NCBI RefSeq assembly: GCF_000143415.4
Contig: NW_003314273.1
Coordinates: 568,074-632,073 of the forward strand
Origin: Selaginella moellendorffii
Lineage: Eukaryota; Plantae; Lycopodiophyta
DNA length: 64,000 nt
Direction: 5' to 3'
Position numbers and translations under genes: made by a program. Shown here piece by piece: positions 7,592-8,029 of the stretch. The notes under the pieces are model-generated. The model made no database searches and was not told the origin of the DNA. It worked only from the letters and a program-made list of their open reading frames with translations. Position 1 is the stretch's first letter. Each line of letters begins with the position of its first letter.

Positions 7592-8029
7592 ATGTTCAAG
7601 AAACTAAATATTTTTCTTTTCCTCATAATATACTCTTTATTGGTGAGTAAATAAATTTCTTTTGTTTTCTAACCCATTTTGTATGTTCTCTAATCAACTT
7701 TTCTATCATATCCTTAGTGGACCAACATATTTGCTATTGGGGATGAATGTAATGGGCAATTTCTTGAATCTTGTAGTCTTTCCACTTGTATTAATGGATA
7801 TTTAACAGCTTCATGTTTAACATATGATCCATTAATAAGTGTTCAAACACATATTCAAATAAAAGATTGTGTCAAAGAGGTAACAAGTTGCTCTGTTTTT
7901 GGTATTGGTCAATTTCTATGCGTAGATGCTGGAAATAATGAGATAACTCAATTAGTAGATTGTGGAATTGTAAATATTAATGGTGAGCTTTATTGTGCAC
8001 CACATGAACCAGAACCATTTAATAAATAA
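7592..8029 (+). CDS. Secreted cysteine-rich protein, cyanovirin-N homolog (CVNH)-like; exons 7592-7642 and 7718-8029; 120 aa
   Basis: Signal exon MFKKLNIFLFLIIYSLL, then a phase-0 GTGAGT..CCTTAG intron, then a stop-free 103-aa exon: WTNIFAIGDECNGQFLESCSLSTCINGYLTASCLTYDPLISVQTHIQIKDCVKEVTSCSVFGIGQFLCVDAGNNEITQLVDCGIVNINGELYCAPHEPEPFNK*. Motifs GxFxxSC, LTASC, TxIxIxDCV and IxNINGEL match the CV-N repeat pattern. Confidence 0.75.

What the first reader, a model, noticed from the sequence alone, without database searches (positions are those of the whole stretch)
7592..8029. Hidden AT-rich gene for a secreted cyanovirin-N-like (CVNH) protein, absent from the ORF track
Seen: inside an apparent AT-rich spacer, a 17-codon signal-peptide exon splices in phase (GTGAGT..TAG, 75 nt) to a stop-free 103-aa exon with 9 Cys. 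GQFLESC..GYLTASC..QTHIQIKDCV resembles the first CV-N repeat (GKFSQTC..SVLTSTC..TSSIDLNSVI), and IVNINGELYC resembles the CV-N C-terminus (IANIDGTLKY). The second repeat is shortened and there are extra Cys, so this is a divergent form. Established: CVNH mannose-binding lectins are patchily distributed (cyanobacteria, filamentous ascomycetes, seedless vascular plants). Inference: a defence or reproductive lectin whose AT-rich codons contrast with the GC3-rich neighbours, so gene predictors would likely miss it.
Basis: partly seen in the sequence, partly recalled or inferred. Interest (0 to 1): 0.85.

Follow-up and report, generated by a model that had tools for sequence, protein, structure and literature searches.

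The report
Spikemoss half-cyanovirin secreted protein gene
An unannotated two-exon gene of the spikemoss Selaginella moellendorffii encodes a small, probably secreted protein that keeps one half (domain A) of a cyanovirin-type mannose-binding lectin and has a short cysteine-rich segment in place of the other half, so it is an odd variant of a family already large in this plant, with expression and sugar binding untested.

Summary
Observation confirmed. The window is S. moellendorffii scaffold GL377577.1, and no gene is called here. The gene is very likely real. The other haplotype holds a 97% identical allele. A tandem paralogue 8 kb upstream (71% identical, both haplotypes) keeps the 17-codon hydrophobic exon, the phase-0 intron and all 9 Cys. 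No RNA evidence could be obtained: the run finder was closed.

Pfam, PDB and large protein searches find nothing. An independent bacterial CVNH profile does. Exon-2 residues 12-48 and 81-93 match cyanovirin domain A (31-33 bits; shuffles at most 12). Residues 49-80 show no similarity to domain B and are about 19 residues shorter. A model built on a CVNH-containing alignment has the CVNH fold, but that test is partly circular.

Best reading: a secreted, disulfide-rich CVNH derivative with at most one sugar site. Two of the four tested site-A residues are kept, so binding is uncertain. The plant already has 27 listed cyanovirin genes. This scan noted the paralogue before (s1-418142, probably s1-375010) and many other CVNH loci. 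Verdict: new variant of a known kind, moderate interest.

The parts
7592..7642 (+). Exon 1: 17 codons, n- and h-region of a predicted signal peptide
   Evidence: Identical in the other haplotype; same length and hydrophobic in the paralogue. Signal peptide judged by inspection, no predictor run.
7643..7717 (+). Phase-0 intron, 75 nt, GTGAGT...TAG
   Evidence: same position in all four copies; lengths 75/72/49/49. Splicing not seen in RNA.
7718..8029 (+). Exon 2: 103 codons plus TAA, 9 Cys, acidic (12 D/E against 3 K/R), no N-glycosylation sequon
7718..7735 (+). c-region of the signal peptide; inferred cleavage after Ala6 of exon 2, leaving a 97-residue mature chain
   Evidence: Inspection (Ile at -3, Ala at -1; Gly at -1 in the paralogue). 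Inference.
7751..7861 (+). CVNH domain A, first part (strands 1-3; Cys19/Cys33 align with CV-N Cys8/Cys22)
7862..7957 (+). 32-residue segment (Cys51, 58, 68) in place of domain B; modelled as one beta-hairpin plus a short helix
   Evidence: No sequence similarity to domain B; model
7958..7996 (+). CVNH domain A, second part (C-terminal hairpin, I-x-N-x-N-G-x-L; Cys82, Cys93)
7997..8026 (+). Acidic, Pro-rich C-terminal tail, low confidence in the model; one residue shorter in the other haplotype
6785..7018 (+). Decayed copy of the 3' end of the PPR gene that precedes the paralogue; marks the duplicated unit
6663..6734 (-). tRNA-Pro(TGG), left flank of the duplicated unit
8284..8355 (-). tRNA-Pro(TGG), right flank; one base differs from the left copy

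Best explanation
A functional two-exon gene, one of a tandem pair that arose by local duplication together with the tail of a PPR gene. It encodes a 120-residue precursor: a signal peptide and a roughly 97-residue secreted, acidic, disulfide-rich protein derived from the cyanovirin-N (CVNH) family. SHOWN: gene anatomy, conservation in four copies, and homology of residues 12-48 and 81-93 to CVNH domain A. INFERRED: secretion to the cell wall space; folding as an intact domain A carrying a reduced, disulfide-stapled remnant of domain B; loss of the domain-B sugar site. It would thus work as a one-site glycan-recognition protein at the plant surface, most likely binding mannose-type glycans of microbes weakly, or an altered ligand. 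Component odds: real gene about 0.93; CVNH-derived about 0.93; still binds a glycan through site A about 0.5; defence rather than development about 0.6.
For: Gene: codon-position bias. The allele is 97% identical, with no gaps in exons but 2 in the intron and 7 in each flank. The paralogue keeps the frame, splice position and 9 of 9 Cys, against 68% identity elsewhere. Homology: a profile from 101 bacterial CVNHs that excludes the query scores exon 2 at 15.8 bits. It ranks the locus first among 2127 six-frame segments and above all 6000 shuffles of exon 2, including Cys-fixed ones (max 12.1). HHalign probability is 84-90%. A single-repeat profile matches 12-48 and 81-92 to consecutive, complementary parts. 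A domain-A profile gives 33 bits, and 30.9 against at most 12.1 when shuffles get the same free cut. These limits match the published domain A, 1-38/90-101 (PMC4926178). The alignment-guided model has pLDDT 80 and matches only CVNH structures (Z 7-8.3, rmsd 2.3-3.0 over 78-88 residues; best unrelated 3.3). The Thr7 and Asn93 equivalents (Ser18, Asn86) are kept.
Against: No Pfam, PDB-sequence, Atlas or protein-database hit. The alignment-free model is poor (pLDDT 51) and finds no CVNH. The good model was fed CVNH sequences, so it is partly circular. The middle segment scores no better than shuffles against domain B. The Glu23 equivalent is Leu34, like the E23I change in the site-A knockout, and the Lys3 equivalent is Gln; both positions vary among bacterial CVNHs. 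dN/dS between paralogues is 0.54-0.78, with a bootstrap interval (0.32-1.19) that includes 1. No RNA data. No plant CVNH from Selaginella could be fetched for comparison.
Confidence: 0.55

Rival explanations
1. A CVNH-derived secreted protein that no longer binds sugar. The domain-A scaffold, rigidified by extra disulfides, serves as a protein-binding or signalling ligand, for example in cell-cell or reproductive recognition.
For: Site B is gone and site A is only half conserved. Several residues near the site differ between paralogues (L16N, E17L, Y36T, P38I, L39T, I87T). Multi-base codon changes are in excess: 20 seen, about 13 expected.
Against: The invariant N-x-N-G-x-L hairpin and Ser18 are kept in all four copies. 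CVNH site residues are known to vary (PMC11952781).
Confidence: 0.27
2. Same protein, different history: one CVNH repeat with an unrelated 32-residue Cys-rich module inserted between the sheet and the hairpin, rather than a worn-down domain B. This reading was noted earlier in s1-375010. It could still be a one-site lectin.
For: Removing 32 residues gives one contiguous repeat. The segment has no detectable similarity to domain B. Fungal type III CVNHs carry an inserted LysM domain (PDB 2l9y).
Against: The segment sits exactly where domain B sits. A G-x-F motif and Cys68 align with CV-N Phe54 and Cys73. Cys58 and Cys68 fall in register across the modelled hairpin, as the canonical pair would (register is my inference). 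Parsimony favours decay within a family of 27 or more genes.
Confidence: 0.1
3. A recently dead or unexpressed duplicate (a pseudogene with an open frame).
For: dN/dS is not significantly below 1. No RNA evidence here. Neither JGI nor RefSeq models appear at the locus. The co-duplicated PPR piece is dead.
Against: Four open copies, about 22% DNA divergence with only one whole-codon indel in exon 2 against many indels in the flanks, all Cys kept, and splice sites kept while intron length changed.
Confidence: 0.05
4. An orphan Cys-rich secreted protein whose likeness to CVNH is chance.
For: No hit in unbiased library searches.
Against: The domain-A score is 31 bits against at most 12 in cut-optimised, Cys-fixed shuffles. 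The two matches are collinear and complementary.
Confidence: 0.03

Closest known systems
Cyanovirin-N (Nostoc ellipsosporum; PDB 2ezm and relatives) and Pfam PF08881 CVNH
   Same: Domain A sequence pattern, Cys8/Cys22 equivalents with the same 14-residue spacing, C-terminal N-x-[DN]-G-x-L hairpin, overall fold in the guided model.
   Different: No recognisable domain B or site B; about 19 residues shorter in the middle; no internal repeat; 9 Cys instead of 4; below Pfam detection.
Fern CrCVNH/CtCVNH (Ceratopteris; PDB 2jzj) and the 27 listed S. moellendorffii cyanovirin genes
   Same: Single-domain CVNH of a seed-free plant with a signal peptide (PMC3645700). 2jzj gives the longest structural overlap (88 residues, Z 7.8). 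An extra terminal disulfide in CrCVNH is recalled from memory, not checked.
   Different: Those were found through the InterPro cyanovirin entry, and the locus has no gene model, so it is not among the 27. Their sequences could not be fetched, so it is untested whether any shares the reduced domain B.
Microvirin (Microcystis; PDB 2yhh) and engineered CV-N domain-B mutants (2rp3)
   Same: CVNH-fold proteins with a single working sugar site (microvirin is called monovalent in a reference title; CV-N mutDB).
   Different: They keep a full-size second domain. Here the second domain is physically reduced or replaced.
Type III CVNH-LysM (Magnaporthe MoCVNH3; PDB 2l9y, 5c8o)
   Same: Shows that the CVNH chain tolerates a foreign segment in its middle; top structural hit, Z 8.3.
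   Different: There the LysM is added between two intact repeats; here domain B itself is missing.

Membership tests
CVNH (PF08881) | Scores above the Pfam gathering threshold (24.5 bits) | tested here: not met
   No Pfam hit at E up to 10 for exon 2; no CVNH hit for any of the four copies. Bacterial controls score 72-82 bits.
CVNH (PF08881) | Two tandem, mutually similar repeats of about 50 residues | tested here: not met
   Half against half: P 0.46 and 0.43; bacterial control P below 0.0005.
CVNH (PF08881) | Domain A pattern (G-x-F-x-x-[ST]-C ... L-x-A-x-C ... T-x-I-x-[LI]; I-x-N-x-[DN]-G-x-L) | tested here: met
   33.1 and 30.8 bits against at most 8.9 in shuffles; 30.9 against at most 12.1 with an optimised cut.
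CVNH (PF08881) | Domain B pattern (N-x-D-G-x-L-x-W hairpin and second three-strand sheet) | tested here: not met
   Scores -1.0 to 1.0 bits, within the shuffle range; invariant N, G, L, W equivalents absent.
CVNH (PF08881) | Cys8-Cys22 disulfide pair | tested here: met
   Cys19 and Cys33 align with columns that are 100% Cys. The bond itself is inferred.
CVNH (PF08881) | Cys58-Cys73 disulfide pair | tested here: inconclusive
   Cys68 aligns with Cys73; Cys58 is 10 residues away instead of 15, and MAFFT places it elsewhere.
CVNH (PF08881) | Cyanovirin fold | tested here: inconclusive
   The guided model matches CVNH structures only, but its alignment contained CVNHs; the unguided model is uninformative.
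CVNH (PF08881) | Site-A residues (K3, T7, E23, N93 of CV-N) | tested here: inconclusive
   They map to Gln14, Ser18, Leu34, Asn86: two of four kept.
CVNH (PF08881) | Binding to Man-alpha1,2-Man or related glycans | not testable with these tools
   Needs recombinant protein.
Secreted plant CVNH | N-terminal signal peptide | tested here: inconclusive
   Basic start, 13-residue hydrophobic core and small residue at -1 in all four copies; no predictor available.
Expressed protein-coding gene | Conserved open frame and splice structure | tested here: met
Expressed protein-coding gene | Spliced transcript | not testable with these tools

The most novel reading that the evidence does not exclude
A natural 'half-cyanovirin': a stably folded lectin made of domain A alone, with domain B reduced to or replaced by a small disulfide-stapled hairpin. 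It regains two-site binding by pairing through its odd ninth cysteine, as a homodimer or with its tandem paralogue. CV-N mutants with one site are inactive until dimerised, including through engineered disulfides (PMC4926178), so this would be a natural version of that design and a subfamily invisible to Pfam.
Probability: 0.2. Interest if true: 0.6.

Novelty: new variant of a known kind. Interest (0 to 1): 0.38.

Why it matters
It shows that the cyanovirin family of Selaginella, already the largest of the plants in the rows I read of a published census (27 genes), has further AT-rich, unannotated members that have diverged below Pfam detection and changed architecture. A natural one-domain form would test whether the intertwined two-domain CVNH fold can lose a domain and still fold and bind. 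The natural role of plant CVNHs remains open (my knowledge), and this pair does not settle it. The finding is mainly an annotation gain and a structural curiosity.

Tried and rejected
Searches with exon 2 that found nothing: Pfam, PDB sequences, word-index protein search, ESM Atlas by features, phage records, metagenome and viral contigs.

The six phmmer hits among 1.84 billion representatives were rejected. They are repeat proteins (YDG, NHL, SdrD, LRR) whose scores are sums of many weak stretches, with a best single stretch of 3-15 bits. Beta-barrel matches of the single-sequence model were rejected because pLDDT was 51.

I could not fetch Selaginella CVNH sequences: a mixed-alignment search returned almost only bacterial proteins, and two PPR loci fetched as a gamble held none. 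Positive selection was considered and is not supported: fourfold sites differ at 6 of 27 and flanks at 24-31%, similar to or above amino-acid-changing sites. A coupled PPR-CVNH transcription unit was rejected for this copy: the upstream PPR piece is decayed, and the downstream PPR is on the other strand beyond a tRNA. A hidden RNA gene: Rfam finds only the two tRNAs.

Three structural papers on CVNHs were not held.

Full report
OBSERVATION. The anatomy is as described. An ATG at 7592 opens 17 codons with a hydrophobic core. A 75-nt phase-0 intron (7643-7717, GTGAGT...TAG) follows, then 103 codons with 9 Cys ending in TAA at 8029. Read unspliced, the frame stops four codons into the intron. Exon 2 has GC 0.45/0.39/0.12 by codon position, against GC3 of 0.70-0.85 in the neighbouring PPR, glucanase and tubulin genes. 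Base shuffles of it stay open 1.2 times in 10,000. It is the longest AT-rich stop-free frame in the window and the only one with more than five Cys.

SOURCE AND CONTEXT. The neighbouring PPR protein identifies the window as Selaginella moellendorffii scaffold GL377577.1, 100% identical over 19.7 kb. The matching region of the other haplotype is on GL377565.1. Neither lists a gene at this place, and exon 2 finds no protein sharing three 5-residue words among 5.8 billion clusters. The gene and its close copies therefore appear unannotated. The gene lies between two tRNA-Pro(TGG) genes.

IS IT A GENE? The allele is 97% identical in exon 2 and identical in exon 1. It has no gaps in the exons, but 2 in the intron and 7 in each 150-nt flank. 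A paralogue lies about 8 kb upstream, just before the window start, on both haplotypes (L001:19772-20183 and L002:20493-20904, minus strand). It has a 17-codon hydrophobic first exon, a 49-nt intron at the same place and phase, 71-72% protein identity and all nine Cys. The stretch 6785-7018 is a decayed copy of the 3' end of the PPR gene that precedes the paralogue, so the pair arose by local duplication of PPR tail plus gene. dN/dS between paralogues is 0.54-0.78, with a bootstrap interval that includes 1. Codons are either unchanged or changed at several bases more often than independence predicts. This fits a fixed core with fast-changing surface positions; positive selection is not shown.

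IS IT CYANOVIRIN-LIKE? Library searches are blank, and an alignment-free model is uninformative. I therefore fetched real CVNH genes from 29 bacterial loci with a degenerate DNA pattern (Pfam confirmed), plus 74 proteins. The latter were retrieved with an alignment that included the query, but the test profile contained none of the four copies. That profile scores exon 2 at 15.8 bits, first among 2127 six-frame segments and above all shuffles, including Cys-fixed ones. HHalign gives 84-90% probability. The pattern of the match is the strongest evidence. A single-repeat profile aligns residues 12-48 to its positions 3-38 and residues 81-92 to positions 39-50. These two pieces are what forms domain A of cyanovirin-N (1-38 and 90-101; PMC4926178). 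A domain-A profile scores them 33 and 31 bits in the two paralogues. When shuffled sequences are given the same free choice of cut, they reach at most 12.1 against 30.9. The 32 residues between score no better than shuffles against domain B. They lack the N-x-D-G-x-L-x-W hairpin and are about 19 residues short. There is no internal repeat. A model built on a 52-row alignment containing CVNHs reaches pLDDT 80, with three strands, a helix, one hairpin, a helix and a terminal hairpin. It matches only CVNH structures (Z 7-8.3, rmsd 2.3-3.0; best unrelated 3.3; Atlas CVNH cluster TM 0.68). This shows compatibility with the fold, not independent proof.

HOW IT MOST LIKELY WORKS. Inferred: the signal peptide is cut after Ala6 of exon 2, and a 97-residue acidic protein is secreted. 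Cys19-Cys33 corresponds to the canonical domain-A disulfide. Cys58-Cys68 probably staples the remnant hairpin. The pairing of Cys11, 24, 51, 82 and 93 is unknown, and one Cys must be left over. With site B gone, the chain has at most one sugar site. Of the four residues whose mutation knocks out site A in CV-N (K3, T7, E23, N93; PMC6131415), the equivalents are Gln14, Ser18, Leu34 and Asn86. Two are kept, and the two lost positions also vary among bacterial CVNHs, so I put glycan binding at about even odds. One-site CV-N mutants lose antiviral activity until dimerised (PMC4926178). The spare Cys could supply such a dimer, but that is speculation. A surface-defence role is the usual expectation for secreted, duplicated, fast-diverging lectin-like genes and is untested here. 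A non-lectin recognition role is the main rival.

COMPARISON AND NOVELTY. Cyanovirin domains are known in bryophytes, lycophytes and ferns, and a census lists 27 in S. moellendorffii (PMC6362431). This protein fails the Pfam threshold, the two-repeat test and the domain-B test, so I file it as CVNH-derived rather than as a canonical member. I found no paper on a natural CVNH with a reduced second domain in the library searched, but the main structural papers were not held. I also could not compare with the plant's own CVNHs, some of which may share this form. The scan had already noted the paralogue (s1-418142; probably its allele as s1-375010, whose 'single repeat plus inserted module' reading I tested and keep as a rival) and many other CVNH loci.

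VERDICT. A real, unannotated, CVNH-derived secreted protein gene with an intact domain A and a reduced or replaced domain B. New variant of a known kind; interest 0.38.

Noticed in passing
window 6663-6734 and 8284-8355 (-): Two tRNA-Pro(TGG) genes in the same orientation, 94.6% alike over 92 nt including about 20 nt of flank, bracket the duplicated PPR-tail plus CVNH-like unit. No tRNA flanks the paralogue within the fetched DNA. The copies may mark how the unit was inserted.
   Followed up: partly
L001:19772-20183 (-) and L002:20493-20904 (-), just before window position 1: Unannotated paralogue of the gene, open on both haplotypes, starting 249 nt after the stop codon of an annotated PPR gene on the same strand.
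   Followed up: yes
window 6785-7018: The decayed PPR fragment differs from its parent at only about 11% of aligned sites, less than the CVNH-like exon (about 22%) or the AT-rich flanks (24-31%). This may be local-alignment bias, a later copying event, or faster change in AT-rich DNA.
   Followed up: partly
window 8393-10186 (-): Single 597-codon PPR frame. The annotated models on this haplotype are shorter (416 and 415 aa), and the one on the other haplotype is 581 aa, so the annotation may be truncated.
   Followed up: no
window 13500-14850, 26400-32400 and about 42000-43000: Other AT-rich islands (GC 0.19-0.28). No comparable Cys-rich open frame and no CVNH-profile match was found in them.
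   Followed up: partly
window 52863-52938 (-): tRNA-Asn(GTT) gene.
   Followed up: no
proteins P0146-P0150 (metagenomes): CVNH proteins of probably bacterial origin with four Cys per repeat, at positions resembling Cys51, Cys82 and Cys93 here. Extra cysteines in CVNHs are thus not unique to plants.
   Followed up: no
L034:253-633 (P0138): A two-repeat CVNH on a short metagenome contig with extra Cys at both ends, possibly of plant origin. It is the top but non-significant hit of the four-copy profile (E 0.08).
   Followed up: partly
window 8021-8031: The stop codon overlaps AATAAA-like runs, as in the paralogue. The other haplotype stops one codon earlier (TGA).
   Followed up: no
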